From positions 124,001-188,000 of the IMG/VR virus record IMGVR_UViG_3300009104_001210: a stretch of 64,000 bases of DNA; one strand, written 5' to 3'. Shown here in pieces: positions 26,702 through 55,512 of this stretch. Position numbers and translations under genes: made by a program. The notes below the pieces were generated by a model. The model was not told the DNA's origin. It saw only the letters and a list, made by a program, of their open reading frames with translations, and made no database searches. Each line of letters starts with the position of its first letter. Within the stretch, counting starts at the first letter, position 1.

Positions 26702-27916
26702 ATGAAAGAAATATATTTAGATCACGCTGCAACAACTTATGTTAGAGATGAAGTCTTGGGAGTAATGAATAAATATTTCCAAGATGAATATGGAAACCCT
26801 GGTAGTTTCCACACAATAGGATTACGACCTAAACGGGCGATGGCTCAAGCAAGAGAAACCGTTAGAGATATTATTAATGCTAAACGAGTAGAGGAAATTA
26901 TCTTTACGGGTAGTGGAACTGAATCAGTAAATTTGGCAATAAAAGGTTTAGTGGAAAAGTTAGAACCTCATTATGGCCCAGCACATATTATCACTTCTAC
27001 GATTGAACACGAAGCAGTAACTGAAACATTATATTATTTAGAACACGATAGAGGATACCGTATAACAAGAATACCAGTTGATAAATATGGTATGGTTAAT
27101 CCAAAAGATGTTGAAGATGCTATTGAAGAAGATACTATCTTGGTTACTATAATGTATGCTAATAATGAGATAGGAACAATACAACCGATAGAAGAAATCG
27201 GAAAGATATGTAGAGAGAAGAAAGTTTTATTCCATACAGATGCTTGTCAGGCAGGTGGAGTGTTAGATTTAGATGTAGAGAAACTAAATGTAGATATGAT
27301 GACATTGAATGGTAGTAAGATATACGGCCCCAAAGGTATTGGGATGTTGTATAAAAAGAATTCAGTAAAGTTAGTTCCATTGATTCATGGTGGAGGCCAA
27401 GAGTTTGGGTATAGGAGTGGAACACAAAATGTAGCATTCATTATGGGATTTACTGAAGCATTAAGATTAGGTCAGGAAGAAAGAGAGAAAGAAAATAAAA
27501 GATTAATTAAATTAAGAACAATGTTGGAAGAAGGTATATTAAGAAGTATAGATAAAACATTTTTAAATGGTCATCCAACAATGAGATTACCAAACAATGC
27601 TAATATCACTATATCAGATATTGAAGGCGAGGCTATGATGTTGTATTTAAATGAGTATGGGATTTGTACTTCATCTGGAAGTGCTTGTACTTCATTAACA
27701 TTAGAACCAAGTCATGTTATATTGGCAATGGGATTACCATATGAGGTAGCTCACGGAACACTAAGATTTACATTAGGTAGGAAAACTACCAAGAAAGATA
27801 TAGAAAAAATAATAGAGGTTTTACCAGGAATAGTAGAAACACTAAGAAAGATATCTCCAGTAAATGTCAATATGGATAAGTTGGAGATACAGGGAGAAAA
27901 AGTTTATGCCAACTAA
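26702..27916 (+). CDS. iscS: Cysteine desulfurase (IscS/NifS group I)
   Basis: YLDHAAT, HTDACQ, GSKIYGPKG PLP lysine, SSGSACTS catalytic Cys. Confidence 0.93.
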   Translation: MKEIYLDHAATTYVRDEVLGVMNKYFQDEYGNPGSFHTIGLRPKRAMAQARETVRDIINAKRVEEIIFTGSGTESVNLAIKGLVEKLEPHYGPAHIITSTIEHEAVTETLYYLEHDRGYRITRIPVDKYGMVNPKDVEDAIEEDTILVTIMYANNEIGTIQPIEEIGKICREKKVLFHTDACQAGGVLDLDVEKLNVDMMTLNGSKIYGPKGIGMLYKKNSVKLVPLIHGGGQEFGYRSGTQNVAFIMGFTEALRLGQEEREKENKRLIKLRTMLEEGILRSIDKTFLNGHPTMRLPNNANITISDIEGEAMMLYLNEYGICTSSGSACTSLTLEPSHVILAMGLPYEVAHGTLRFTLGRKTTKKDIEKIIEVLPGIVETLRKISPVNVNMDKLEIQGEKVYAN

Positions 27917-36186: not shown

Positions 36187-37626
36187 GTGTGTGGCATAGC
36201 AGGTATTTATAGTCATAGGTCTGTAGCACCAGAATTGTATGAGTGTATAGTTCATTTACAACATAGGGGACAAGATGCCGCAGGGATGATGACATATGAT
36301 GAACGTATGCACAAACATAAAGGATTGGGATTAGCTAGAGACGTATTTACAAAAAATAATATATCTTTACTTAAAGGTAATGTTGGTATTTCACATAATA
36401 GATATCCTACACATGGAGAGTTTGGTCATGGTGAGATACAACCCGTATGGACTTCCGTACCATATGGAATAGCAATAGCACATAATGGACAGATAACAAA
36501 CTATGATGAATTAGTAGAAGAAGTTACACAAAAGGAAAAGAGATATCTTAATACCACAAGTGATACTGAAGTTTTATTACATATATTAGCAAATGAATTA
36601 GATAAGAATGGAATACCAAAAACTTCAGAAGAGTTTTTTAATCATTTATGTGAGGCAGTTAGTACTATATTTACAAAAGTTAAAGGGGCTTATTCTGTTA
36701 CAGGTATTATTGTTGGAAAAGGATTAATTGTTTTTAGAGATCCACGAGGTATTAGACCATTAGTTAAAGGTGAAAGAGATGATAACGGTAAAAAGGAGTA
36801 TATCTTTTCATCAGAAAATACTATGTTTTATTCATTAGGTTATGAACCAAAGGGTAATGTATTACCTGGAGAACTTATTTACATAGATGAAAGTGGTAAG
36901 TATTTTAGCAAACGATTAGTTAAGGAAGAATTTAATCCTTGTATATTTGAGTATGTATATTTTTCACGACCAGATGCAGTACTGAATGATGTAGGTGTGT
37001 ATCGTTCAAGATTGAGAATGGGTCAGAATTTAGCATATGCATGGATGAAGAAGTATCCATATATAGTACCTGATATAGTTATACCTGCACCGAGTACGGC
37101 AAATACCGCCGCATTATCATTTGCTCATGAAATAGATGTTAGATATTCAGAAGGATTGTATAAGAATCCGTTTGTTGGTAGAACATTTATTATGCCAGGA
37201 CAAGAAGAACGTAAAAGTTCTGTTAAACATAAACTCGTACCACAAGATACAGAGATACGAGATAAGAAAGTATTAATAGTAGATGATAGCATTGTTCGTG
37301 GTAATACAAGTAAAGAGATAGTAAGAATGGTAAAAGATTTTGGAGCAAAAGAAGTGTATTTTGTTAGTGCTTGTCCACCAATAAAACACCCTTGTTATTA
37401 TGGTGTTGATATGCCAACTAAAGAGGAATTAATTGCTGGAATTAATAAAATAGATACTATTAAAAAAGATTTAGGAGTTGATATTTTACTATATCAAGAG
37501 ATAGATGATTTAGTTGAAGCAGTAACACGAAGAGGTGATCATCATATAGAGAATCCATGTATGGCTTGTCTTGATGGACACTATGTAGTTAATGGAAGAA
37601 AAGTTCATGAATTGGTACTTAATTAA
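36187..37626 (+). CDS. purF: Amidophosphoribosyltransferase (Fe-S type)
   Basis: N-terminal C1 GIAG, HRGQDAAG, IVDDSIVRG PRPP motif, CIFE/CYYG/CMAC Cys ligands. Confidence 0.95.
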   Translation: MCGIAGIYSHRSVAPELYECIVHLQHRGQDAAGMMTYDERMHKHKGLGLARDVFTKNNISLLKGNVGISHNRYPTHGEFGHGEIQPVWTSVPYGIAIAHNGQITNYDELVEEVTQKEKRYLNTTSDTEVLLHILANELDKNGIPKTSEEFFNHLCEAVSTIFTKVKGAYSVTGIIVGKGLIVFRDPRGIRPLVKGERDDNGKKEYIFSSENTMFYSLGYEPKGNVLPGELIYIDESGKYFSKRLVKEEFNPCIFEYVYFSRPDAVLNDVGVYRSRLRMGQNLAYAWMKKYPYIVPDIVIPAPSTANTAALSFAHEIDVRYSEGLYKNPFVGRTFIMPGQEERKSSVKHKLVPQDTEIRDKKVLIVDDSIVRGNTSKEIVRMVKDFGAKEVYFVSACPPIKHPCYYGVDMPTKEELIAGINKIDTIKKDLGVDILLYQEIDDLVEAVTRRGDHHIENPCMACLDGHYVVNGRKVHELVLN

Positions 37627-38126
37627 TGATTAATAAGATAATGATTGTAGCGCACCCTGATGATGAAGCACTATTTGGTGGCGCTGAATTATTATCACAC
37701 CCAAAAGAATATAAAGTTGTAGTAGTAGATGAATATCACAATGATGTTAGACAAAAAGAGTTTAAGGATTCCATGCAATTTATAGGAATTACAGATTTTG
37801 AACATTGGACAGGTTATAAAGGTGGAGAAGATTATCATAGAGAAAAACTTATTTATGAGTTATTGAGAGTATTGAGAGAAAAAAAATGGGAAAAGATTGT
37901 AACTCATAATAGAGCAGGTGAATATGGTCACCCAAGACATAGAGCATTGCATGATATATTAAATCATTTAAGACCTGAAATACTATGGCAGTTTGATAAA
38001 GGTAAAGAAAGATTACCACAAGATTTATTAATTAAGAAAAGAGATTTATTAAAAGTATATGGAAGCCAAAGAGATGTTTTAGATTGGTTTAGTCCCTGGT
38101 ACGAGAAAATAACGAAGGTAAATTGA
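37626..38126 (+). CDS. PIG-L/LmbE family deacetylase
   Basis: AHPDDE and GHPRH motifs. Confidence 0.8.
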   Translation: MINKIMIVAHPDDEALFGGAELLSHPKEYKVVVVDEYHNDVRQKEFKDSMQFIGITDFEHWTGYKGGEDYHREKLIYELLRVLREKKWEKIVTHNRAGEYGHPRHRALHDILNHLRPEILWQFDKGKERLPQDLLIKKRDLLKVYGSQRDVLDWFSPWYEKITKVN

Positions 38127-39163
38127 TGAGAAGAGCATTAGCATATGATGACATAAATATTACACCTAAATATTCAGATGTGGAACATAGAGACGACATA
38201 AATATTACTACAAGATTTACTAAGAAAACTTTATTAGATATACCAATTGTATCTTCACCTATGGATACTATTACTGGATTTGATATGGCTTTTGCTATGA
38301 TGGTGTTGGGTGGAGTTGGTGTTGTACATAGATTTAATACTATTGAAGAACAATCATTGATAATGAATCAGTTACATACTGAAAAGTATGATCATTGTGA
38401 ATTACCATTATCTGCAGCTATTGGAGTTACAGGGGATTATTTAGAAAGGGCACAAGAATTAATTAAGAACGGATGTAATGTTCTACTTATAGATGTAGCG
38501 CATGGACATCATAAATTAGTAGGAGAAGCAATTGAAGAGGTCAAAACCAAGTTATCAGGAGTTGAAATCATTGCGGGATCAGTTGCGACAGGAGAAGCGT
38601 GTGAATACTTATGTGAAAAAGGAGCGGACTCGATTAGAGTCGGAATTGGAAATGGAAGTTTATGTGAAACGAGAATTAGAACGGGTGTCGGAATCCCTCA
38701 AGTGTCTGCTCTCATTGATTGCGTCGCCGTTGCTGATAGGTTTGATGTTCCTATTATTGGTGATGGTGGGATCCGTAATGTTGGTGATGTGTGTAAAGGA
38801 CTTGCTTGTGGGGCTGACTCGATTATGTTGGGCTCCCTGTTATCAGGTACTAAAGAAACTCCAGGCACGATTGAAAAAATAGGCCAATGGCCGAATGAAA
38901 TGTTACATAAAAAATATAGAGGTTCAGCATCATTGGACTCTAAAAAATCAAGAGGGGATAATAAAAATGTCGAAGGTAATCACAAAGTTATACCATACAA
39001 AGGGAAGGTCAAAAGAATTATACAAGATATACAAGAGGGAATTCGTAGTTCTTTCAGCTATGTTGGTGCTAACAATTTTCCTGAGTTTTATTCTAAAGTA
39101 GAGTTAATAGAAGTTACAAGAGCAGGAAATATTGAAGGTATGCCACACCTTCTTAATACTTAA
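38123..39163 (+). CDS. IMP dehydrogenase/GMP reductase family protein (no CBS domains)
   Basis: SSPMDT, IDVAHGH, GIGNGSLCETR, DGGIRN; YRGSAS/NVEG looks closer to GuaC-type. Confidence 0.9.
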   Translation: MMRRALAYDDINITPKYSDVEHRDDINITTRFTKKTLLDIPIVSSPMDTITGFDMAFAMMVLGGVGVVHRFNTIEEQSLIMNQLHTEKYDHCELPLSAAIGVTGDYLERAQELIKNGCNVLLIDVAHGHHKLVGEAIEEVKTKLSGVEIIAGSVATGEACEYLCEKGADSIRVGIGNGSLCETRIRTGVGIPQVSALIDCVAVADRFDVPIIGDGGIRNVGDVCKGLACGADSIMLGSLLSGTKETPGTIEKIGQWPNEMLHKKYRGSASLDSKKSRGDNKNVEGNHKVIPYKGKVKRIIQDIQEGIRSSFSYVGANNFPEFYSKVELIEVTRAGNIEGMPHLLNT

Positions 39164-39169
39164 TAATAT

Positions 39170-39604
39170 GGGGCTGAATGGTTTCGACAGATGCTATTTG
39201 ATAATATAGTGCAACGGAGTTTGAGTAAGACTTGCTATAAAAGACTCACAAACCCAAAATGGCGATAAATCGCTACAAGGGTTGGAAATTGATTGGCATT
39301 TAGCCAATACCGAACAGATGTTTGACACTTATGTTGAACCTGCAAGGGCTTCCCAACCAACTTACGCATACGCATAAGTTACTGAGTTACCTAACACTCG
39401 GTCATAAAATGAGTTAGGTGGTAGGATGGTTGGTATATGTCTTTGAGTAGGAATTAGACGATAAAGAAACCTATCAGTTAAACTCATCTGAGTAAATGAG
39501 GTATGGTGGGTTGTTAGTTGACTACCGATTTGGAAACTAACTAAGTTGTAAATGACTATTTATTAAAAGTAGACTGGACGCGGGTTCGAATCCCGCCAGC
39601 TCCA
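39170..39604 (+). ncRNA. ssrA: tmRNA (one-piece)
   Basis: 5' GGGGCTGAATGGTTTCGAC, 3' T-arm GCGGG-TTCGAAT-CCCGC, acceptor CAGCTCC-A with G3:U70; internal ORF ending TAA 39375-77. Confidence 0.93.
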
Positions 39605-39624
39605 CTAAAATTGAGGAGAATATT

Positions 39625-40331: not shown

Positions 40332-41075
40332 ATGATAAATCATAAACATAAGTTTATTTTTGTACATATACCACATACTGCAGGAACAAGTATAGAAGAG
40401 GCTTTTGGTTGGTATATACCAAATGAATCAAAGGAAATTACTAATGAAGAGTTTGCATTAATTAAAGATAGACATTTAACAGGCGCACAGAGTAAAAGAA
40501 AATATAAAAAATATTGGGATGATTATTTTGTATTTACAATTATAAGGAATCCATTTGATTATTTAGTTTCTAGTTGGGCAAGTTCTTCTGATTATATAGA
40601 TGTTAAGAATAGGTATGCTAGTTATGGTAAATATTTGGGTGATGAAATAATATATAAAAGACGTGAACGACGATTTAGTTCAAGTTCTGATAGAGACTTA
40701 TTGGAAAGAATGGGGCTTAGTATAGATAAAATTTATTTTAAAGATTATGTAAATGCTTGTATAGATTATAAAAGAAATTTGAATCAAACAAATATGTTAG
40801 GTGATTTAGGTAGATATGATTTTATTGGTAAGTTTGAAGATATAGAAAATAGTTGGCAATATATTTGTAAAGAACTTGGAGTAGAAATAATATTAGGAAA
40901 CTCTAATCCAACATTTAATTTGAAGAAAAAGCATTATAGTCATTGGTATACAAAAGATATAGAGTTAATAGATAAAAGTATTCCAATACTTGATGATGAA
41001 TTAATAGATAGAGTTGCAGATTATTGTTCAAGAGATTTAGAAACATTTGATTATAAGTTCGATTATGGATTATGA
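40332..41075 (+). CDS. Sulfotransferase family 2 protein
   Basis: FIFVHIPHTAGTSI, FTIIRNPFD, FIGKFE. Confidence 0.85.
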   Translation: MINHKHKFIFVHIPHTAGTSIEEAFGWYIPNESKEITNEEFALIKDRHLTGAQSKRKYKKYWDDYFVFTIIRNPFDYLVSSWASSSDYIDVKNRYASYGKYLGDEIIYKRRERRFSSSSDRDLLERMGLSIDKIYFKDYVNACIDYKRNLNQTNMLGDLGRYDFIGKFEDIENSWQYICKELGVEIILGNSNPTFNLKKKHYSHWYTKDIELIDKSIPILDDELIDRVADYCSRDLETFDYKFDYGL

Positions 41076-41539
41076 AGAGTACGCCAAGCAATAAAGAAAT
41101 TGGTTTTTTTAAACAGTTATATTCAGAAGAACCACATAGTTGGGTTAATCCAATGTTCATTTCACGAAGCGATTGGCCACCACCTCAAGATTGGTTAGAT
41201 GAAGCGCCACATTTAAATCATAAAATGATACATAAAAGAGCTTCAGTTTGTTTATGTGTTTGGGAAAGATTTGGTGAAGTAACAAATCGTGCACTTATAG
41301 ATTACTTTAAATTAATAATACCACACGTTCATTTACCATTAGACTTAGATGGTTTTATGAAAATAGTAGATGGTAGACATAGATTAATAGCATATAAAGA
41401 ATTAGATATAATGTGTCCTGTTTATATAGGTAGAAAAAGAGTGAGATATGGTACTTGTTGGCAAAAAGGACTTGCTTATAATGATGGAACAGTTGATAAG
41501 AATGTAAGACATAGAAGTGGATATTATGATCTTAAATAA
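41072..41539 (+). CDS. ParB/sulfiredoxin-like domain protein
   Basis: IVDGRHRLIAY. Confidence 0.6.
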   Translation: MKSTPSNKEIGFFKQLYSEEPHSWVNPMFISRSDWPPPQDWLDEAPHLNHKMIHKRASVCLCVWERFGEVTNRALIDYFKLIIPHVHLPLDLDGFMKIVDGRHRLIAYKELDIMCPVYIGRKRVRYGTCWQKGLAYNDGTVDKNVRHRSGYYDLK

Positions 41540-42242
41540 TGAATATAAATTTATTTTTATACATATCCCAAAAAATGCTGGCACTTCTTTGAGAAGTAAT
41601 TTGTGTAGATTAAGTGGTATGAAACAACCGTACACTTTTGAAGAAAAAGCGTTTGCACGTTTATGTACACATACTAAACCATGTGATTGTAAAAAGGATG
41701 GCGTCTTATCAGGTAGACATATTAGGGCTATTACATTACGAGATGAAAAAGAAATAGATAATTGGAATGATTTGTATAAGTTTGCATTTGTAAGAAATCC
41801 ATATGATAGAATGGTATCATTCTGGGCATTCTATAGAAACATAGGAACATCTATGACAAATGTTAGAAGGTCAGCAGAAATGATGTCTTTTGATGATTGG
41901 GTTAAATATTTAAGAAAGAAATCATTTGCCAAAATGGGAGAGCATCCTGAATCACTTGTTCCACCTTGGCGGTGGCCACAAGTATCTTGGATTGAAAAGG
42001 ATGGTAAACAGATAATAGATTTTGTAGGTAGATACGAAAATTTACAGGAAGATTTTGAATACATATGTAAACATATTGGTTTAGATAAAGATAGTTCTTT
42101 GTGGAAAGGACATGAACAATTAGAAGAATTTAATAAATCAGGTAGATTAAAAGATTATAGACAATACTATACGGAAGAATCAAAGAAGATAGTTGGTTGG
42201 TGGTTTAAAAGAGATTTGGAATTATTTGATTATTCCTTTTAA
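41526..42242 (+). CDS. Sulfotransferase family 2 protein
   Basis: FIFIHIPKNAGTSL, FAFVRNPYDRMVS, FVGRYE. Confidence 0.88.
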   Translation: MILNNEYKFIFIHIPKNAGTSLRSNLCRLSGMKQPYTFEEKAFARLCTHTKPCDCKKDGVLSGRHIRAITLRDEKEIDNWNDLYKFAFVRNPYDRMVSFWAFYRNIGTSMTNVRRSAEMMSFDDWVKYLRKKSFAKMGEHPESLVPPWRWPQVSWIEKDGKQIIDFVGRYENLQEDFEYICKHIGLDKDSSLWKGHEQLEEFNKSGRLKDYRQYYTEESKKIVGWWFKRDLELFDYSF

Positions 42243-42245
42243 TAT

Positions 42246-42317
42246 GGCCCCATCGTCTAATGGTGAGGACGTCGCCCTTTCAAGGCGGAGATATGGGTTC
42301 GACTCCCGTTGGGGCTA
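42246..42317 (+). tRNA. tRNA-Glu(TTC)
   Basis: Full cloverleaf; loop CT-TTC-AA; no encoded CCA. Confidence 0.92.
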
Positions 42318-42318
42318 C

Positions 42319-42401
42319 GGGCAGGTAGCAAAGCGGTTAAATGCACCAAACCGTAAGTTTGGCGTCGTGAGACTACGGTGGTTCGAATCCATCCCTGCCC
42401 T
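42319..42401 (+). tRNA. tRNA-Tyr(GTA), atypical C33/G38/U73
   Basis: GGGCAGG/CCTGCCC acceptor, long variable arm, loop CC-GTA-AG. Confidence 0.8.
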
Positions 42402-42402
42402 C

Positions 42403-42475
42403 GGGGCTGTAGCTCATTTGGGAGAGCGCTTCCCTTGCACGGAAGAGGCAGCAGGTTCGATTCCTGTCAGCTCCA
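42403..42475 (+). tRNA. tRNA-Ala(TGC)
   Basis: G3:U70, loop CT-TGC-AC. Confidence 0.93.
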
Positions 42476-42476
42476 C

Positions 42477-43074: not shown

Positions 43075-43148
43075 GTGCTGGTGCCGGAGTGGTCTAACGG
43101 GGTGGGTTGCAAACCCATTATTCACAGGTTCGAATCCTGTTCAGCACT
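43075..43148 (+). tRNA. tRNA-Cys(GCA)
   Basis: Loop TT-GCA-AA, U73. Confidence 0.9.
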
Positions 43149-43301
43149 CATAACTAAGGAGAAATACCAATGTAATATACAACACTAAATATAAGATTAG
43201 GGTTTAGCAGTACCAATATATAAACTGTCGGTGTTTAAAGTACACCACAAAATTTAGTGTACGGATGGTATCTAAAGAGGGACGGAGGCGGGAAAAAATT
43301 A

Positions 43302-43374
43302 GCCACTTTAGCTCAGTTGGTAGAGCAGCTCACTTGTAATGAGCAGGTCCTCAGTTCGAGTCTGAGAAGTGGCT
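43302..43374 (+). tRNA. tRNA-Thr(TGT)
   Basis: GCCACTT/AAGTGGC acceptor, loop CT-TGT-AA. Confidence 0.93.
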
Positions 43375-43385
43375 CAAAAATAATT

Positions 43386-44412: not shown

Positions 44413-45579
44413 ATGAATAAAGTTGTAGTCAAAATCGAAATGTCGGGAAACCGATATAACGCTTTTGATTCTGATGGTAATAAATACACATCAGAAATTG
44501 GTACTGGAACACGTAAAAGAGCATTTGAACAAGGTATGGCTCTTGAACGTCGTGAAGGTAAAACTGGTAAAACCTATTGGTGGAAAGTTCCAATGAGTGA
44601 ATTTGAAGTATCATCAGTTCCTGAGTTTGATGTTTCTTCGGTAGAAGTACCTGAAGAACATGGTGAGATGTTGAATTTCATTCATAGTTCATATAAACTG
44701 AAACCTAAAGGTTTGGTTATGAAGGAACTGAAGTGGAAATATTTAGTTCGTTCAGGTGTTAGAGGTAAGAACATTCTAATGACAGGTCCTGCCGGATGTG
44801 GTAAAACATTGGCAGCTAAGTCGTTAGTTAACGCACTTGATCGTCCTGATTTTTACTTTAATTTGGGTGCGACTCAAGACCCTCGTTCCTCTCTAATTGG
44901 TAATACTCACTTTGATAAGTCAAAGGGTACTTACTTTTCAGAATCACTTTTTGTGAAGGCGATTTCGACGCCTAACTCAGTTATTCTGTTAGATGAGTTA
45001 AGTAGGGCTCACCCTGACGCTTGGAATATTTTGATGACAGTTCTTGATGAAGGTCAGAGATATCTAAGGTTGGATGAGGCTGACGGGCAGGCGACGATTA
45101 AAGTTGCAAGTGGTGTTACTTTTGTAGCGACAGCGAACATTGGTAATGAATACACTTCTACAAGAGTTATGGATAAAGCCTTAATGGATAGATTCATTAT
45201 TGTAGAAATGGATGTTCTAAACTCTGATGAGGAATATGGATTGTTACAATATATGTTTCCTCATGTGGATCCTGAGTTATTGAAAGCAGTTGCTGAGATA
45301 GCTCACGCATCAAGGTCAGAATCAAAATCAGAAGCAGGTAGGATTTCAAGTGGAATTTCGACAAGAACTTCAGTTGAAATGTCTGGTCTTCTGTATGATG
45401 GTTTTGGATTAGATGAAGCGTCTGAAGTTAGTATCTATCCTCAGTATTCTGAAGATGGTGGAATGGAATCTGAAAGAACTTACATTAGACAGTTAGTACA
45501 GAAGTTCGTTTCTGATGGTAGTTCTGAAGACCTCTTTAATGAAGACGAAATAGAATCTACAGAAGATTCTGATTCTTAA
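44413..45579 (+). CDS. AAA+ ATPase, MoxR/CbbQ/NorQ-like
   Basis: GPAGCGKT Walker A, ILLDELSR Walker B, ATAN, ALMDRF. Confidence 0.88.
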   Translation: MNKVVVKIEMSGNRYNAFDSDGNKYTSEIGTGTRKRAFEQGMALERREGKTGKTYWWKVPMSEFEVSSVPEFDVSSVEVPEEHGEMLNFIHSSYKLKPKGLVMKELKWKYLVRSGVRGKNILMTGPAGCGKTLAAKSLVNALDRPDFYFNLGATQDPRSSLIGNTHFDKSKGTYFSESLFVKAISTPNSVILLDELSRAHPDAWNILMTVLDEGQRYLRLDEADGQATIKVASGVTFVATANIGNEYTSTRVMDKALMDRFIIVEMDVLNSDEEYGLLQYMFPHVDPELLKAVAEIAHASRSESKSEAGRISSGISTRTSVEMSGLLYDGFGLDEASEVSIYPQYSEDGGMESERTYIRQLVQKFVSDGSSEDLFNEDEIESTEDSDS

Positions 45580-53001: not shown

Positions 53002-53950
53002 AGATATTTTATATGAAGATCAAGCGTGGAAAACTGTTAAGTTTTTATTAGATGTAAAAAAAATATCTAATGAGGTTGTAGATATGCACAATATAGAATC
53101 TATAAAGCAATTAAATGTTTCAAGTGATGATATATGTTTTGCTAGATTTGGTCATCATTTTGATGATAAGATAGCAACTAATAAAGCATATGATGTATTA
53201 ACTCAAAAATTTAATAAAATATATCCTTCAAAAGACGCATATTATTATTATGATGATAAATTAAAGCAATATGAATTTATGTTAGAAAATGATATACCTT
53301 GTTTGAAAACATATTATGTAGGTAGTAAAGAAGAGATAGAAAAATTAAATATAAAATTTCCTATAGTTACTAAAAAAACTTGGGGGGCTGGAACTGAACA
53401 AGTTAATAAGTGGGATGATTATGAATCTATTGTTGATAATAAAGATACTCGAAGTTGGACAGGGGGATCTATATTTCCATGTTTAGTTCAAGAATATAAA
53501 GATGTAGATTATGATATTAGAGTTAGAATTTTAAACTCTAAAGTTTTCTTTACTAAAAGAATGCACGAATTTAAAACAAAAAATAAAGATAATTTTCCAT
53601 ATGGTACAAAAGAGATTCTTAAAAAAGATAGAATAAAATATCATTTACCACCATATGAAGTTCCTGTAGCATTACCAATAAATGATTTAGCAGAAGTAGA
53701 AGATATTATACCTATAGTAGAAAAATTACATAAGATTCAAAATGAAAAATTGAATAGTAATTTTGTGGTGTGGGATATTCTTAGAACAAATGAAGGAATA
53801 AAAATTCTTGAATTTAGTCATGTTACAGTATATAAAAGTTTTCCACAAATTTATTATGATATAGAATATAAAGAAGCAAATAAATTAACAATAAAAAATC
53901 GTGAACATTTTTTTTATTTGTATAACGAAATATTAAAAGGATTAATATGA
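52982..53950 (+). CDS. RimK-like ATP-grasp ligase
   Basis: DDKLKQY, IPCLKT, FPIVTK, LVQEY, DIRV, WDIL, ILEF. Confidence 0.7.
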   Translation: MKFYLHKDILYEDQAWKTVKFLLDVKKISNEVVDMHNIESIKQLNVSSDDICFARFGHHFDDKIATNKAYDVLTQKFNKIYPSKDAYYYYDDKLKQYEFMLENDIPCLKTYYVGSKEEIEKLNIKFPIVTKKTWGAGTEQVNKWDDYESIVDNKDTRSWTGGSIFPCLVQEYKDVDYDIRVRILNSKVFFTKRMHEFKTKNKDNFPYGTKEILKKDRIKYHLPPYEVPVALPINDLAEVEDIIPIVEKLHKIQNEKLNSNFVVWDILRTNEGIKILEFSHVTVYKSFPQIYYDIEYKEANKLTIKNREHFFYLYNEILKGLI

Positions 53951-55512
53951 AGAAAGTTATTATAGTTGGTGGTGGATTTGCAGGTTACTTAACAGCGTTG
54001 TTTTTAAATAAAAAATTTCCTAAATTAAAAATTGATATAATAAAATCATCAGATAAAGAACAAATTTCTGCTGGAGAACAAACAGGCAAAGAACAACTAC
54101 AATTGTTTTTTGAATCATTAGGAATTGAAGAAACTGAATGGTTTAGTAGAACAAAATCTTTTTTAAAAATAGGTAATTCTTTTGTTGGGTGGGGAAACCG
54201 TGAAAATTTTGATCCTCGAGTTGGTGGACCAGATGTAGTTAATCATAGTTTTGTAATGGAAAATAAATTATTACCTTTACTTAGGAATGGTGGTGGTATG
54301 AAATCCGTAAAGGATTCTATGAAATATAATGATAAGTTACATACTGAATTATATCAAAATAGTTTTTTAGAAACACCCATAGATAATACGGATGATTATA
54401 TAGATAGTTTTAAAAAACACTTTAAAAATAGTTTTTTTAATAGAAAGAATAATAGAGCCATAGCTCATATGCATGATTGGTTAGAGATAGGTAAATTTAT
54501 AGAAACTAAGTTTGATGATAATGTTAAAATAATTACTGATCATATAACTGATGTGGTTGTAGATAAAAAAAATAATACTATAGAATATCTTGTTAATAAA
54601 GATAAAGAAAAGATTAAAGCAGATCACTACGTAGATTGTACAGGTATTAGTAGAATTTTGATTTCTAAACTTAGTAAAGTTGTAGATATTAGTGATGAAT
54701 ATCCTGTAAATAGTGCCGTATTTGGTCCAGTAGAATATATAGATAGAACTAAAGAGATGGTGCCAACCTTATATACTACTGCTTTTAAAAATGGTTATTC
54801 ATTTAAAACACCATTACAACATAGGATAGGAACAGGATATGTCTATTCAGATAAGTATATTAGTAAAGATGAAGCAATAGATGAGATAAATGATTATTGG
54901 GATGGTAGATTTAAGTCAGATCAAGTTAATCATTTAAAATGGACTCCATCTTATGTAGTTAAACCTTTTCAGAAAAATTGTAGCGCTGTAGGATTAGCAG
55001 GACAATTTGATTGTCCAATGGAATCTACAGTATTTACTCAGATATCAACTGCTCTTCAACAATTAGGAAATTATTTAAATAGAGATAATAAATTATTATA
55101 CATGAATCGTTCTGATATAAGAGATGAAGATATGTTAAATTATTGTAATACTTGGACTGAATATACTTTTCATAATACAAGACATTTTAAACAAATGATG
55201 TTTTATACTACAAATAGAGATGATAGCGAATTTTGGAAGAATATTAAAACACTTAATTATTCTGATATTTTTTATAAAAAATTAAGTTTCTTTTTAGACA
55301 ATTCATTTGATTATATAATAGAAAATAGAAATAAGTTTCCTGATTATACTCCACCAACAAATTTTAATATTAATGAAGATAGATTTTGGAGAGTATATCA
55401 AAAAGGATTTAAAGGATATTTTGATTATATGGGAATAAGGGGTGTAGGACATAGTATGATATTAGATGTTCATAATTGGTTAATGATTCTTGCGTATAAA
55501 AAATACATTTAA
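53947..55512 (+). CDS. Tryptophan halogenase-like flavoprotein
   Basis: IVGGGFAG, AGEQT, VDCTG, PLQHRIGTGYVYS, PMESTV. Confidence 0.8.
   Translation: MKKVIIVGGGFAGYLTALFLNKKFPKLKIDIIKSSDKEQISAGEQTGKEQLQLFFESLGIEETEWFSRTKSFLKIGNSFVGWGNRENFDPRVGGPDVVNHSFVMENKLLPLLRNGGGMKSVKDSMKYNDKLHTELYQNSFLETPIDNTDDYIDSFKKHFKNSFFNRKNNRAIAHMHDWLEIGKFIETKFDDNVKIITDHITDVVVDKKNNTIEYLVNKDKEKIKADHYVDCTGISRILISKLSKVVDISDEYPVNSAVFGPVEYIDRTKEMVPTLYTTAFKNGYSFKTPLQHRIGTGYVYSDKYISKDEAIDEINDYWDGRFKSDQVNHLKWTPSYVVKPFQKNCSAVGLAGQFDCPMESTVFTQISTALQQLGNYLNRDNKLLYMNRSDIRDEDMLNYCNTWTEYTFHNTRHFKQMMFYTTNRDDSEFWKNIKTLNYSDIFYKKLSFFLDNSFDYIIENRNKFPDYTPPTNFNINEDRFWRVYQKGFKGYFDYMGIRGVGHSMILDVHNWLMILAYKKYI

What the first reader, a model, noticed from the sequence alone, without database searches (positions are those of the whole stretch)
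39261..39377. tmRNA with a 38-residue tag ending YAYA
Seen: open frame from the putative resume codon GGC (after CAAAAT) reading (A)GDKSLQGLEIDWHLANTEQMFDTYVEPARASQPTYAYA-stop. Established: most tags are about 10 aa and end in AA for ClpXP; the long tags of Mollicutes end in YAFA-like motifs and go to Lon. Inference: the phage redirects rescued proteins to another protease or stabilises them. The resume codon is inferred.
Basis: partly seen in the sequence, partly recalled or inferred. Interest (0 to 1): 0.65.

Follow-up and report, generated by a model that had tools for sequence, protein, structure and literature searches.

The report
Phage tmRNA with long conserved tag
A 216-kb uncultured marine phage carries an intact ribosome-rescue RNA (tmRNA) whose tag is about four times the usual length; the tag is conserved across a clade of related phages, but which protease reads it is unknown.

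Summary
Window 39170-39604 (+) is a complete one-piece tmRNA (Rfam RF00023, 77.5 bits). It has a G3:U70 acceptor stem, T arm, helix 2, PK1, helix 5 and PK2. Rfam's alignment, the A(-4)A(-3) upstream rule and Bacteroidota tmRNAs all place the resume codon at GGC 39261. The frame then runs 38 codons to TAA 39375-77, which lies in helix 5.

Fifty-six marine viral or metagenome contigs carry close relatives. Their 27 distinct tags are 35-42 codons long and always in frame. dN/dS is 0.31, against 1.4 and 1.1 in the shifted frames, with 0 in-frame stops against 63 and 112. The tags share SLxGLxIDWHLA near the start and QP[T/S]YA[Y/F]A(A) at the end, so the long tag is under selection as a peptide.

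The phage has no SmpB, ClpP or Lon. The host is unknown. The bacteria with the closest tRNA-like domain are Bacteroidota, with 9-11-residue tags ending YALAA. A tag profile found nothing convincing in about 1,200 bacterial genomes.

The C-terminus (YAYA, or YAYAA in some relatives) is close to the canonical degron. This is a new variant of a known kind, of moderate interest.

The parts
39170..39604 (+). Mature one-piece tmRNA gene, 435 nt to the discriminator A. The gene continues C-U-A, so CCA is not encoded.
   Evidence: Rfam RF00023 at 77.5 bits over the full model. There are 35 distinct full-length relatives of 399-449 nt.
39170..39176 (+). Acceptor stem, 5' strand GGGGCUG, with G3 of the G3:U70 alanine identity pair
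   Evidence: It pairs with 39597-39603. G3:U70 is kept in 35 of 35 relatives, and positions 5 and 6 covary (CG/AU and UA/GC/CG).
39188..39216 (+). Helix 2, 5' strand
   Evidence: RNAalifold pairs it with 39547-39576, and several pairs changed on both sides.
39217..39247 (+). Pseudoknot 1 (S1 39217-22/39228-33; S2 39223-26/39244-47)
   Evidence: All pairs are possible in 35 of 35 relatives, but the sequence is nearly invariant, so there is no covariation test. Rfam PK1 aligns here.
39248..39260 (+). Single-stranded A-rich leader before the resume codon (A at -4 and -3)
   Evidence: Relatives read UAAUU|GGC or UAAAU|AGC, matching the Rfam consensus UAAuU|GCa. Bacteroidota tmRNAs read ..AUAAUU|GGC GAA.
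39261..39263 (+). Resume codon GGC (Gly); AGC (Ser) in about half of the relatives
   Evidence: Gly and Ser resume codons are both on record (PMC1168896).
39261..39374 (+). Tag reading frame of 38 codons: a conserved N-terminal block (SLxGLxIDWHLA), a variable acidic middle, and a conserved end (QPTYAYA)
   Evidence: Frame kept in 27 of 27 distinct variants. dN/dS is 0.31 against 1.38 and 1.11 in the shifted frames; stops are 0 against 63 and 112.
39375..39377 (+). Stop codon UAA, in the 3' strand of helix 5
   Evidence: In L064, UAG covaries with ACC on the other strand.
39359..39380 (+). Helix 5 (39359-67 pairs with 39372-80), which holds the last tag codons and the stop
   Evidence: Pair 39359-39380 is A-U in 17 and G-C in 18 relatives, so the third base of the Pro codon covaries with the base after the stop.
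39382..39419 (+). Pseudoknot 2 (S1 39382-87/39396-401; S2 39389-95/39413-19)
   Evidence: Compensatory changes occur in both stems (CG26/UA9, AU26/GC9; GC30/AU2/GU3 and others).
39420..39546 (+). Region of pseudoknots 3 and 4; helices not resolved
   Evidence: Rfam aligns it with low posterior. The MAFFT columns are too uncertain for pair counts, and only PK4 S2 is partly supported.
39547..39576 (+). Helix 2, 3' strand
39580..39596 (+). T arm (stem 39580-84/39592-96, loop UUCGAAU)
   Evidence: Four of the five stem pairs changed on both sides among relatives.
39597..39604 (+). Acceptor stem 3' strand CAGCUCC plus discriminator A
38123..39163 (+). IMPDH/GMP-reductase-family gene ending 6 nt before the tmRNA; a conserved upstream neighbour and the probable source of transcription
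   Evidence: Pfam PF00478, E 4e-100. It lies just upstream of the tmRNA in 38 of 50 related loci. No convincing promoter lies between the two genes.

Best explanation
This is a functional phage-encoded one-piece tmRNA. It is probably transcribed together with the upstream GMP-reductase-like gene and cut out by host tRNA-processing enzymes. Host enzymes would add CCA, and host AlaRS would charge it with alanine through the G3:U70 pair. Host SmpB and EF-Tu would deliver it to ribosomes stalled on broken messages during infection. Translation resumes at GGC 39261 and stops at UAA 39375 in helix 5. The released protein therefore carries Ala plus 38 residues: an acidic, largely disordered tail. The tail has a conserved block near its start (SLxGLxIDWHLA) and a non-polar end (QPTYAYA). 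Most likely the tail is still a proteolysis tag read by host AAA+ proteases through its C-terminus, which is a close variant of the Bacteroidota-type YALAA ending. The long, conserved upstream part most likely adds a second recognition element or an unstructured handle. Precedents are the SspB-binding part of the E. coli tag and the multipartite Lon tag of Mycoplasma. Shown here: the RNA architecture, the resume site, the reading frame and purifying selection on the peptide. Inferred: expression, processing, charging, use of host SmpB, and everything about which protease or adaptor reads the tag.
For: Full-model Rfam hit. Covariation in the acceptor stem, T stem, helix 2, helix 5 and PK2 across 35 distinct relatives. 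G3:U70 is invariant. Three lines fix the resume site: the Rfam alignment, the U/A(-5)A(-4)A(-3) context in all relatives, and positional homology with Bacteroidota GGC GAA resume sites. For the reading frame, 27 distinct tags of 35-42 codons have indels only in multiples of three and no in-frame stop. Median dN/dS is 0.31 against 1.38 and 1.11 in the shifted frames, and pN/pS is 0.12 over the last 7 codons. Synonymous codons vary at invariant residues: L5, I10, P38, A41 and A43. The tags are acidic (6-9 D/E against 0-2 K/R) and AlphaFold finds no stable fold (mean pLDDT 57, one short helix). No SmpB, ClpP, Lon_C or CCA-adding enzyme is found in the phage genome, which CheckV rates 100% complete. 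The C-terminus is Y-A-Y-A(-A), against Y-A-L/M-A-A in the bacteria with the closest tRNA-like domain.
Against: The host is not identified, so the host tag and host protease set are unknown. Synonymous sites in the N-terminal block are also constrained (pS 0.27 against 0.66 in the middle). That block can form RNA helices: GCGA/UCGC around the resume codon, UGGC/GCCA, and a long-range GGUUGG/CCAACC pairing. Part of its conservation may therefore act at the RNA level rather than the peptide level. One sub-lineage (L018, L023, L047) has CAA in place of the stop and ends ..SNTRT, so a non-polar end is not kept everywhere. A tag four times the usual length slows each rescue event, which argues against a pure ribosome-recycling role but does not say what the extra length does.
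Confidence: 0.6

Rival explanations
1. The long tag ending YAYA is a specificity switch like that of Mycoplasma: tagged proteins go to Lon or another protease instead of ClpXP, or are stabilised.
For: The tag is long and ends in an aromatic-Ala-aromatic-Ala motif. Two variants (4 contigs) end YAFA, as in Mycoplasma. The Mycoplasma tag is long, ends AFA and is degraded by Lon (PMC3985003, PMC8403727). The read-through lineage without a non-polar end would fit a tag that need not be a ClpX degron.
Against: No protease was tested. Seven of the 27 variants end YAYAA, restoring terminal Ala-Ala. The ending differs from the YALAA and YAMAA of the closest bacterial tRNA-like domains by one substitution. 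The tag profile found nothing in 201 Bacillota genomes, the GTDB phylum that includes the mollicutes. The phage carries no Lon.
Confidence: 0.2
2. The resume codon is the next triplet, GAU 39264. It is invariant as GAN in all relatives, whereas 39261 varies between GGC and AGC. The tag would be 37 codons in the same frame.
For: The second codon is GAT, GAA or GAG in 27 of 27 variants, and the first is AGC in 12. Resume codons usually start with G, and Asp and Glu resume codons are known (PMC1168896).
Against: The conserved A would then sit at -7 and -6 rather than -4 and -3. The Rfam alignment and the Bacteroidota tmRNAs both put the resume at GGC. A Ser resume codon has a precedent.
Confidence: 0.1
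3. The true frame is +1 (GCG 39262), giving a short tag of 13 residues in the window and 8 in most relatives. The long frame would be a by-product of RNA structure.
For: GCG is the commonest type of resume codon and is conserved. In most relatives this frame stops after 8 codons at UGG UAA.
Against: In this frame dN/dS is 1.38 and its end varies between W-stop and ..LIGI-stop. It has no Ala-rich end. The long frame shows peptide-level selection and only in-frame indels.
Confidence: 0.03
4. The RNA is not used for tagging at all. It would be a decoy that soaks up host SmpB or AlaRS, or a decaying copy captured from a host.
For: tRNA-like-domain-only tmRNA-like genes exist in phages. Examples are DS6A (PMC4131195) and the 84-nt gene seen here in L006. 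The phage has no SmpB.
Against: A decoy needs no reading frame, yet the frame, helix 5, PK1 and PK2 are all under selection across 35 distinct relatives.
Confidence: 0.04

Closest known systems
Canonical one-piece bacterial tmRNA (Rfam RF00023), especially the Bacteroidota type
   Same: The layout is the same: tRNA-like domain with G3:U70, helix 2, PK1, A-rich leader, GGC resume codon followed by an acidic codon, stop codon in helix 5, then PK2. The 5' 21 nt are identical to two Bacteroidota MAGs (one Schleiferiaceae), and the 3' tRNA-like domain is 90-94% identical to Flavobacteriales and Cytophagales. The tag ends in aromatic-Ala-X-Ala.
   Different: The tag is 38 codons instead of 9-11. It has a conserved N-terminal block with no bacterial counterpart in about 1,200 genomes sampled. 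The ending is YAYA(A) rather than YALAA. The RNA is 435 nt against about 400. The gene lies in a phage, and only the two ends resemble any bacterial tmRNA retrieved.
[quoted passage not shown]
   Same: Both are unusually long tags ending in aromatic-Ala-aromatic-Ala. Both are precedents for a tag with several recognition elements.
   Different: There is no detectable sequence relationship. The tRNA-like domain is not mollicute-like. Some relatives end in Ala-Ala. It is unknown whether the host lacks ClpXP, and no protease was tested.
Known phage-encoded tmRNAs: cluster C mycobacteriophages (Bxz1 and others), Bacillus phage G, huge phages, and the two-piece tmRNAs of Melnitz and pelagimyophages (PMC4131195, PMC7162821, PMC9004378)
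   Same: All are tmRNA genes carried by large lytic phages next to tRNA genes. Use of host SmpB is proposed, and the function in infection is unknown.
   Different: This clade is one-piece and marine. In the ARAGORN-based survey of PMC9004378, only 2.5% of one-piece phage tmRNAs were marine. ARAGORN misses every member tested here. No record in the phage collection resembles it. None of those papers, as read here, describes a tag of this length with conserved motifs.
Longest catalogued mRNA-like domain: Odontella sinensis chloroplast, 126 nt (PMC1168896)
   Same: It shows that the tmRNA architecture tolerates reading frames of this size.
   Different: It is an organelle tmRNA unrelated in sequence. 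Here the frame with its stop is 117 nt, and the distance from the end of PK1 to the end of helix 5 is 133 nt.

Membership tests
tmRNA (RF00023, one-piece) | Scores above the curated covariance-model threshold over the whole model | tested here: met
   77.5 bits against 47, model positions 1-374. Relatives score 57-72 bits.
tmRNA (RF00023, one-piece) | tRNA-like domain: 7-bp acceptor stem with G3:U70, and a T arm with a GUUCGAAUC-type loop | tested here: met
   G3:U70 is present in 35 of 35 relatives. Acceptor and T stems show compensatory changes.
tmRNA (RF00023, one-piece) | 3' CCA end | tested here: inconclusive
   The window encodes C-U-A after the discriminator. Some relatives (L016, L017, L063, L066) encode CCA. 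CCA would have to be added by the host, as no CCA-adding enzyme is found in the phage.
tmRNA (RF00023, one-piece) | Long helix 2 joining the tRNA-like domain to the pseudoknot ring | tested here: met
   39188-39216 pairs with 39547-39576, with covariation.
tmRNA (RF00023, one-piece) | PK1 about 11-13 nt upstream of the resume codon | tested here: met
   Both stems can form in 35 of 35 relatives, 13 nt before GGC. The sequence is invariant, so there is no covariation evidence.
tmRNA (RF00023, one-piece) | Resume codon preceded by conserved A at -4 and a purine at -3 | tested here: met
   A(-4) is present in all 53 contigs. Position -3 is A in 51 of them, G in one and C in one.
tmRNA (RF00023, one-piece) | Short reading frame ending at a stop codon within helix 5, encoding a tag with a non-polar, Ala-rich C-terminus | tested here: met
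   The stop lies in the 3' strand of a covarying helix 5 and the end is Y-A-Y-A. The frame is not short (38 codons), which is the feature that departs from the norm.
tmRNA (RF00023, one-piece) | Pseudoknots 2-4 downstream of the frame | tested here: inconclusive
   PK2 is well supported. PK3 and PK4 are not resolved in the alignment.
tmRNA (RF00023, one-piece) | Alanylation, SmpB binding and tagging of non-stop products | not testable with these tools
   The phage has no SmpB, and no read data could be obtained.
Mycoplasma-type extended Lon tag | Tag of about 25 residues or more ending in [Y/F]-A-F-A | tested here: inconclusive
   The length criterion is met. The ending is YAYA in most variants, YAFA in 2 of 27 and YAYAA in 7 of 27.
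Mycoplasma-type extended Lon tag | Sequence relationship to mollicute tags or tmRNAs | tested here: not met
   The tag profile found no match in 201 Bacillota genomes. Tags of uncultured Bacilli and Tenericutes MAGs retrieved here (21 residues ending AFA) share only the last residues with it.
Mycoplasma-type extended Lon tag | Host lacks ClpXP, and Lon degrades the tag | not testable with these tools
   The host is unknown.

The most novel reading that the evidence does not exclude
The conserved N-terminal block of the tag (SLxGLxIDWHLA) is a phage-specific address. It would be read by a phage or host factor other than the usual degron receptors. The phage tmRNA would then mark the products of broken host messages for a fate of the phage's choosing, distinct from host quality control. 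Examples are accelerated recycling into amino acids, or sequestration. This would be the first tmRNA tag with a function designed by a virus.
Probability: 0.15. Interest if true: 0.8.

Novelty: new variant of a known kind. Interest (0 to 1): 0.55.

Why it matters
Phage tmRNAs are known but their purpose is not. This clade offers a handle on that question. Its tag is four times the usual length, under clear selection as a peptide, unlike any bacterial tag sampled, and found in marine viral and metagenome contigs from many samples. If the conserved upstream block has its own reader, it would show how a virus re-addresses the host's ribosome-rescue products. It would also supply a new orthogonal degradation tag for synthetic biology, as the Mesoplasma tag did. 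On the practical side, the standard annotator ARAGORN misses the whole clade. Surveys reporting that marine phages rarely carry one-piece tmRNAs (PMC9004378) may therefore undercount them.

Tried and rejected
- ARAGORN on the window and on related loci gave no call for any member of the clade.
- I suspected ARAGORN's limit on tag length. Removing up to 11 codons in silico, purely as a software control, did not restore the call. Length alone is therefore not the reason, and I make no claim about the cause.
- blastn of the tmRNA region against 50,697 phage records gave only a 36-nt tRNA-like-domain match to a Xanthomonas phage.
- tblastn of three phage proteins found no close cultured relative and gave no host clue.
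- Pfam and PHROGs searches with the tag peptide found nothing.
- AlphaFold on the tag alignment gave a low-confidence, mostly disordered model. No fold search was run on it.
- The promoter and terminator scan gave fewer promoter-like sites than shuffled controls, and nothing convincing before the gene.
- The long-range pairing GGUUGG 39280-85 with CCAACC 39353-58 is conserved but shows no double changes, so it is left open.
- Pair counts for PK3 and PK4 failed because the alignment there is unreliable.
- The +1 frame and a decoy role were considered and rejected (see rivals).
- The single weak profile hit in a cyanobacterial genome (23 bits, inside a 297-residue frame) is taken as chance.
- The large protein searches were not used. 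tmRNA tags are not in protein databases, so a blank result would mean little.

Full report
**What the window is.** The window is bases 124001-188000 of a 216,422-bp IMG/VR virus record that CheckV rates complete. The genome is 31% G+C, and every frame of 350 codons or more lies on the + strand. Several large proteins match T4-type baseplate-wedge and tail-fibre families. No cultured phage is close. It is therefore an uncultured marine jumbo myovirus-like phage with no known host.

**The observation.** Rfam's tmRNA model (RF00023) matches 39170-39607 on the + strand over its full length, at 77.5 bits against a threshold of 47. The frame from there is open for 38 codons to UAA 39375-39377 and ends T-Y-A-Y-A. 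ARAGORN does not report the gene.

**Relatives.**
- A 20-nt word from pseudoknot 1 retrieved 15 IMG/VR contigs and 41 metagenome contigs, which by their record names appear to be marine.
- Of these, 53 have a complete tag region, giving 27 distinct tags. 51 have a complete gene, giving 35 distinct tmRNAs of 399-449 nt.
- An IMPDH/GMP-reductase-family gene (window 38123-39163) lies directly upstream in 38 of 50 loci. Downstream genes differ between loci.
- In the window, 6 nt separate that gene's stop from the first G of the tmRNA. No convincing promoter lies between them. Co-transcription followed by RNase P processing is therefore the likely route, but this is inferred.

**RNA anatomy.**
- The acceptor stem (39170-76 with 39597-603) keeps G3:U70 in all 35 sequences and shows compensatory changes at positions 5 and 6.
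- The T stem (39580-84 with 39592-96) changes on both sides at four of its five pairs.
- Helix 2 (39188-216 with 39547-76) also covaries.
- Pseudoknot 1 (39217-47) can form in all sequences but is invariant, so it cannot be tested.
- Helix 5 (39359-67 with 39372-80) contains the last codons and the stop. Its outer pair is A-U in 17 sequences and G-C in 18. The third base of the proline codon therefore covaries with the base after the stop. In L064 the change from ACU to ACC is matched by UAA to UAG.
- Pseudoknot 2 (39382-419) follows at once and covaries in both stems.
- The region of pseudoknots 3 and 4 (39420-546) is not resolved.
- The gene encodes C-U-A rather than CCA after the discriminator. 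A few relatives encode CCA.

**The resume codon.** Three lines of evidence agree on 39261.
1. The Rfam alignment places it there.
2. The five bases before it read UAAUU or UAAAU in most relatives and AAAAU in the window. A is at -4 in all 53 contigs. Position -3 is A in 51 of them, G in one and C in one. This is the pattern of the Rfam consensus (UAAuU before GCa).
3. Bacteroidota tmRNAs that share the 5' end of this RNA read ..AAUU GGC GAA.. at the same place.

The codon is GGC in 15 of the 27 distinct tags and AGC in 12. Both glycine and serine resume codons are on record (PMC1168896). A start at the next codon, GAU, cannot be excluded. It would shorten the tag by one residue.

**The frame is translated.**
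- The 27 distinct tags are 35-42 codons long. One lineage in which the stop has become CAA reaches 49 codons.
- All length differences are multiples of three.
- There is no in-frame stop in any tag, against 63 and 112 stops in the two other frames.
- Median pairwise dN/dS is 0.31, against 1.38 and 1.11 in the shifted frames.
- Over the last seven codons pN/pS is 0.12.
- Invariant residues use several codons: Leu5 CTA/CTT/CTC, Ile10 ATA/ATT/ATC, Pro38, Ala41 and Ala43.
- The consensus is [G/S][D/E]xSLxGLxIDW[H/Q][L/F]A, then a variable acidic stretch, then QP[T/S]YA[Y/F]A, with an extra A in seven variants.
- The peptides carry 6-9 acidic and 0-2 basic residues. AlphaFold predicts no stable fold.

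One caution applies to the N-terminal block. Its synonymous sites are also constrained (pS 0.27 against 0.66 in the middle). The block can form small helices and a possible long-range pairing. Its conservation may therefore be partly at the RNA level.

**Phage against host.**
- The phage genome has no match to SmpB, ClpP, the Lon protease domain or the CCA-adding enzyme family. The RNA must therefore rely on host factors.
- A scan of one genome per species for the 5' 21-mer, with two positions left free, returned 41 loci, mostly Bacteroidota. The exact 21-mer occurs in a Schleiferiaceae MAG, another Bacteroidota MAG and one actinobacterial MAG. The 3' tRNA-like domain is 90-94% identical to many Flavobacteriales and Cytophagales.
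- The Bacteroidota tmRNAs among these carry tags of 9-11 residues ending YALAA, FALAA or YAMAA.
- Only the two ends of the RNA resemble these bacterial tmRNAs, so this is a weak host clue at best.
- A profile of 26 phage tags finds its own locus at 83 bits. It finds nothing in 401 Bacteroidota, 401 Pseudomonadota or 201 Bacillota genomes, and only a 23-bit chance-level hit in 201 Cyanobacteriota.
The real host remains unknown.

**Function.** Rescue of stalled ribosomes during infection is the established activity of the family and the reasonable default.
This rests on the analogy with Mycoplasma, whose long tag ends AFA and is degraded by Lon (PMC3985003, PMC8403727). Nothing here tests it.
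- *Points against a clean switch.* The ending is one substitution and one residue away from the Bacteroidota-type degron. Seven variants restore Ala-Ala. There is no sequence relationship to mollicute tags.
- *My preferred reading (confidence 0.6 overall; lower for the tag's role, which is not shown).* The C-terminus is still a degron for host AAA+ proteases. The long acidic, disordered upstream part, with its conserved block, supplies either a second recognition element or an unstructured handle.
- *An exception.* The read-through lineage (L018, L023, L047) ends ..SNTRT, so the non-polar end is not indispensable in every member.

**Novelty.** Phage tmRNAs are known from cluster C mycobacteriophages, Bacillus phage G, huge phages, and two-piece forms in Melnitz and pelagimyophages (PMC4131195, PMC7162821, PMC9004378). 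Long mRNA-like domains up to 126 nt are catalogued (PMC1168896). Five phrases for phage- or virus-encoded tmRNA matched only five papers in the library, and none of the phage tmRNA papers read here describes this clade or a phage tag with these properties. ARAGORN, the tool used in the published phage surveys, misses all members tested. Shortening the tag in silico does not rescue the call, so the cause is not simply length. I rate this a new variant of a known kind, with interest 0.55.

**Limits.** There are no expression data, no host and no biochemical test. The large protein searches and read mapping were not used. No alternative genetic code was needed.

Noticed in passing
window 38123-39163 and 39170: An IMPDH/GMP-reductase-family gene ends 6 nt before the tmRNA. 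It is the conserved upstream neighbour in 38 of 50 related loci, whereas downstream genes differ. The reason for this fixed pairing is unknown.
   Followed up: partly
window 42246-42476 and 43075-43375: Five tRNA genes are present. Glu, Tyr and Ala abut one another with no spacer (42246-42318, 42319-42402, 42403-42476). The tRNA-Ala has the same acceptor stem as the tmRNA (GGGGCUG/CAGCUCC) and gives a weak sub-threshold tmRNA hit (25.6 bits).
   Followed up: no
L018:5155-5581, L023, L047: In one sub-lineage, seen in three contigs, the tag stop codon is CAA instead of UAA. The frame runs 10 codons further into PK2 and ends ..SNTRT, without a non-polar terminus. The same change breaks one helix 5 pair.
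   Followed up: partly
L053:2283-2681: This relative has a 22-nt deletion in the conserved N-terminal part of the tag, which breaks the frame and leaves 6 codons. The flanks resemble two different sub-lineages, so it may be an assembly chimera.
   Followed up: no
L005:5910-6281 (-): A G+C-rich viral contig has a tmRNA (72 bits) with the same 5' 21-mer as the window. It has another long frame of about 28-31 codons ending F-V-F-A, and ARAGORN misses it too. Long tags with aromatic-Ala endings may recur in unrelated phage tmRNAs.
   Followed up: partly
L006:5315-5398 (-): This is an 84-nt gene in a viral contig consisting only of the tRNA-like domain: acceptor stem, short helix, T arm and an encoded CCA, with no reading frame. 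It resembles the one reported for mycobacteriophage DS6A.
   Followed up: partly
window 26702-27916, 36187-38126, 40332-42242, 44413-45579, 53947-55512: This stretch is rich in auxiliary metabolic genes. They include a cysteine-desulfurase-like protein, a PurF-like amidophosphoribosyltransferase, a PIG-L deacetylase, two sulfotransferases, a MoxR/CbbQ-type AAA+ ATPase and a tryptophan-halogenase-like protein.
   Followed up: no
whole record G000 (216,422 bp): Every open frame of 350 codons or more lies on the + strand. The genome is 31% G+C, while the tmRNA is 40%.
   Followed up: no
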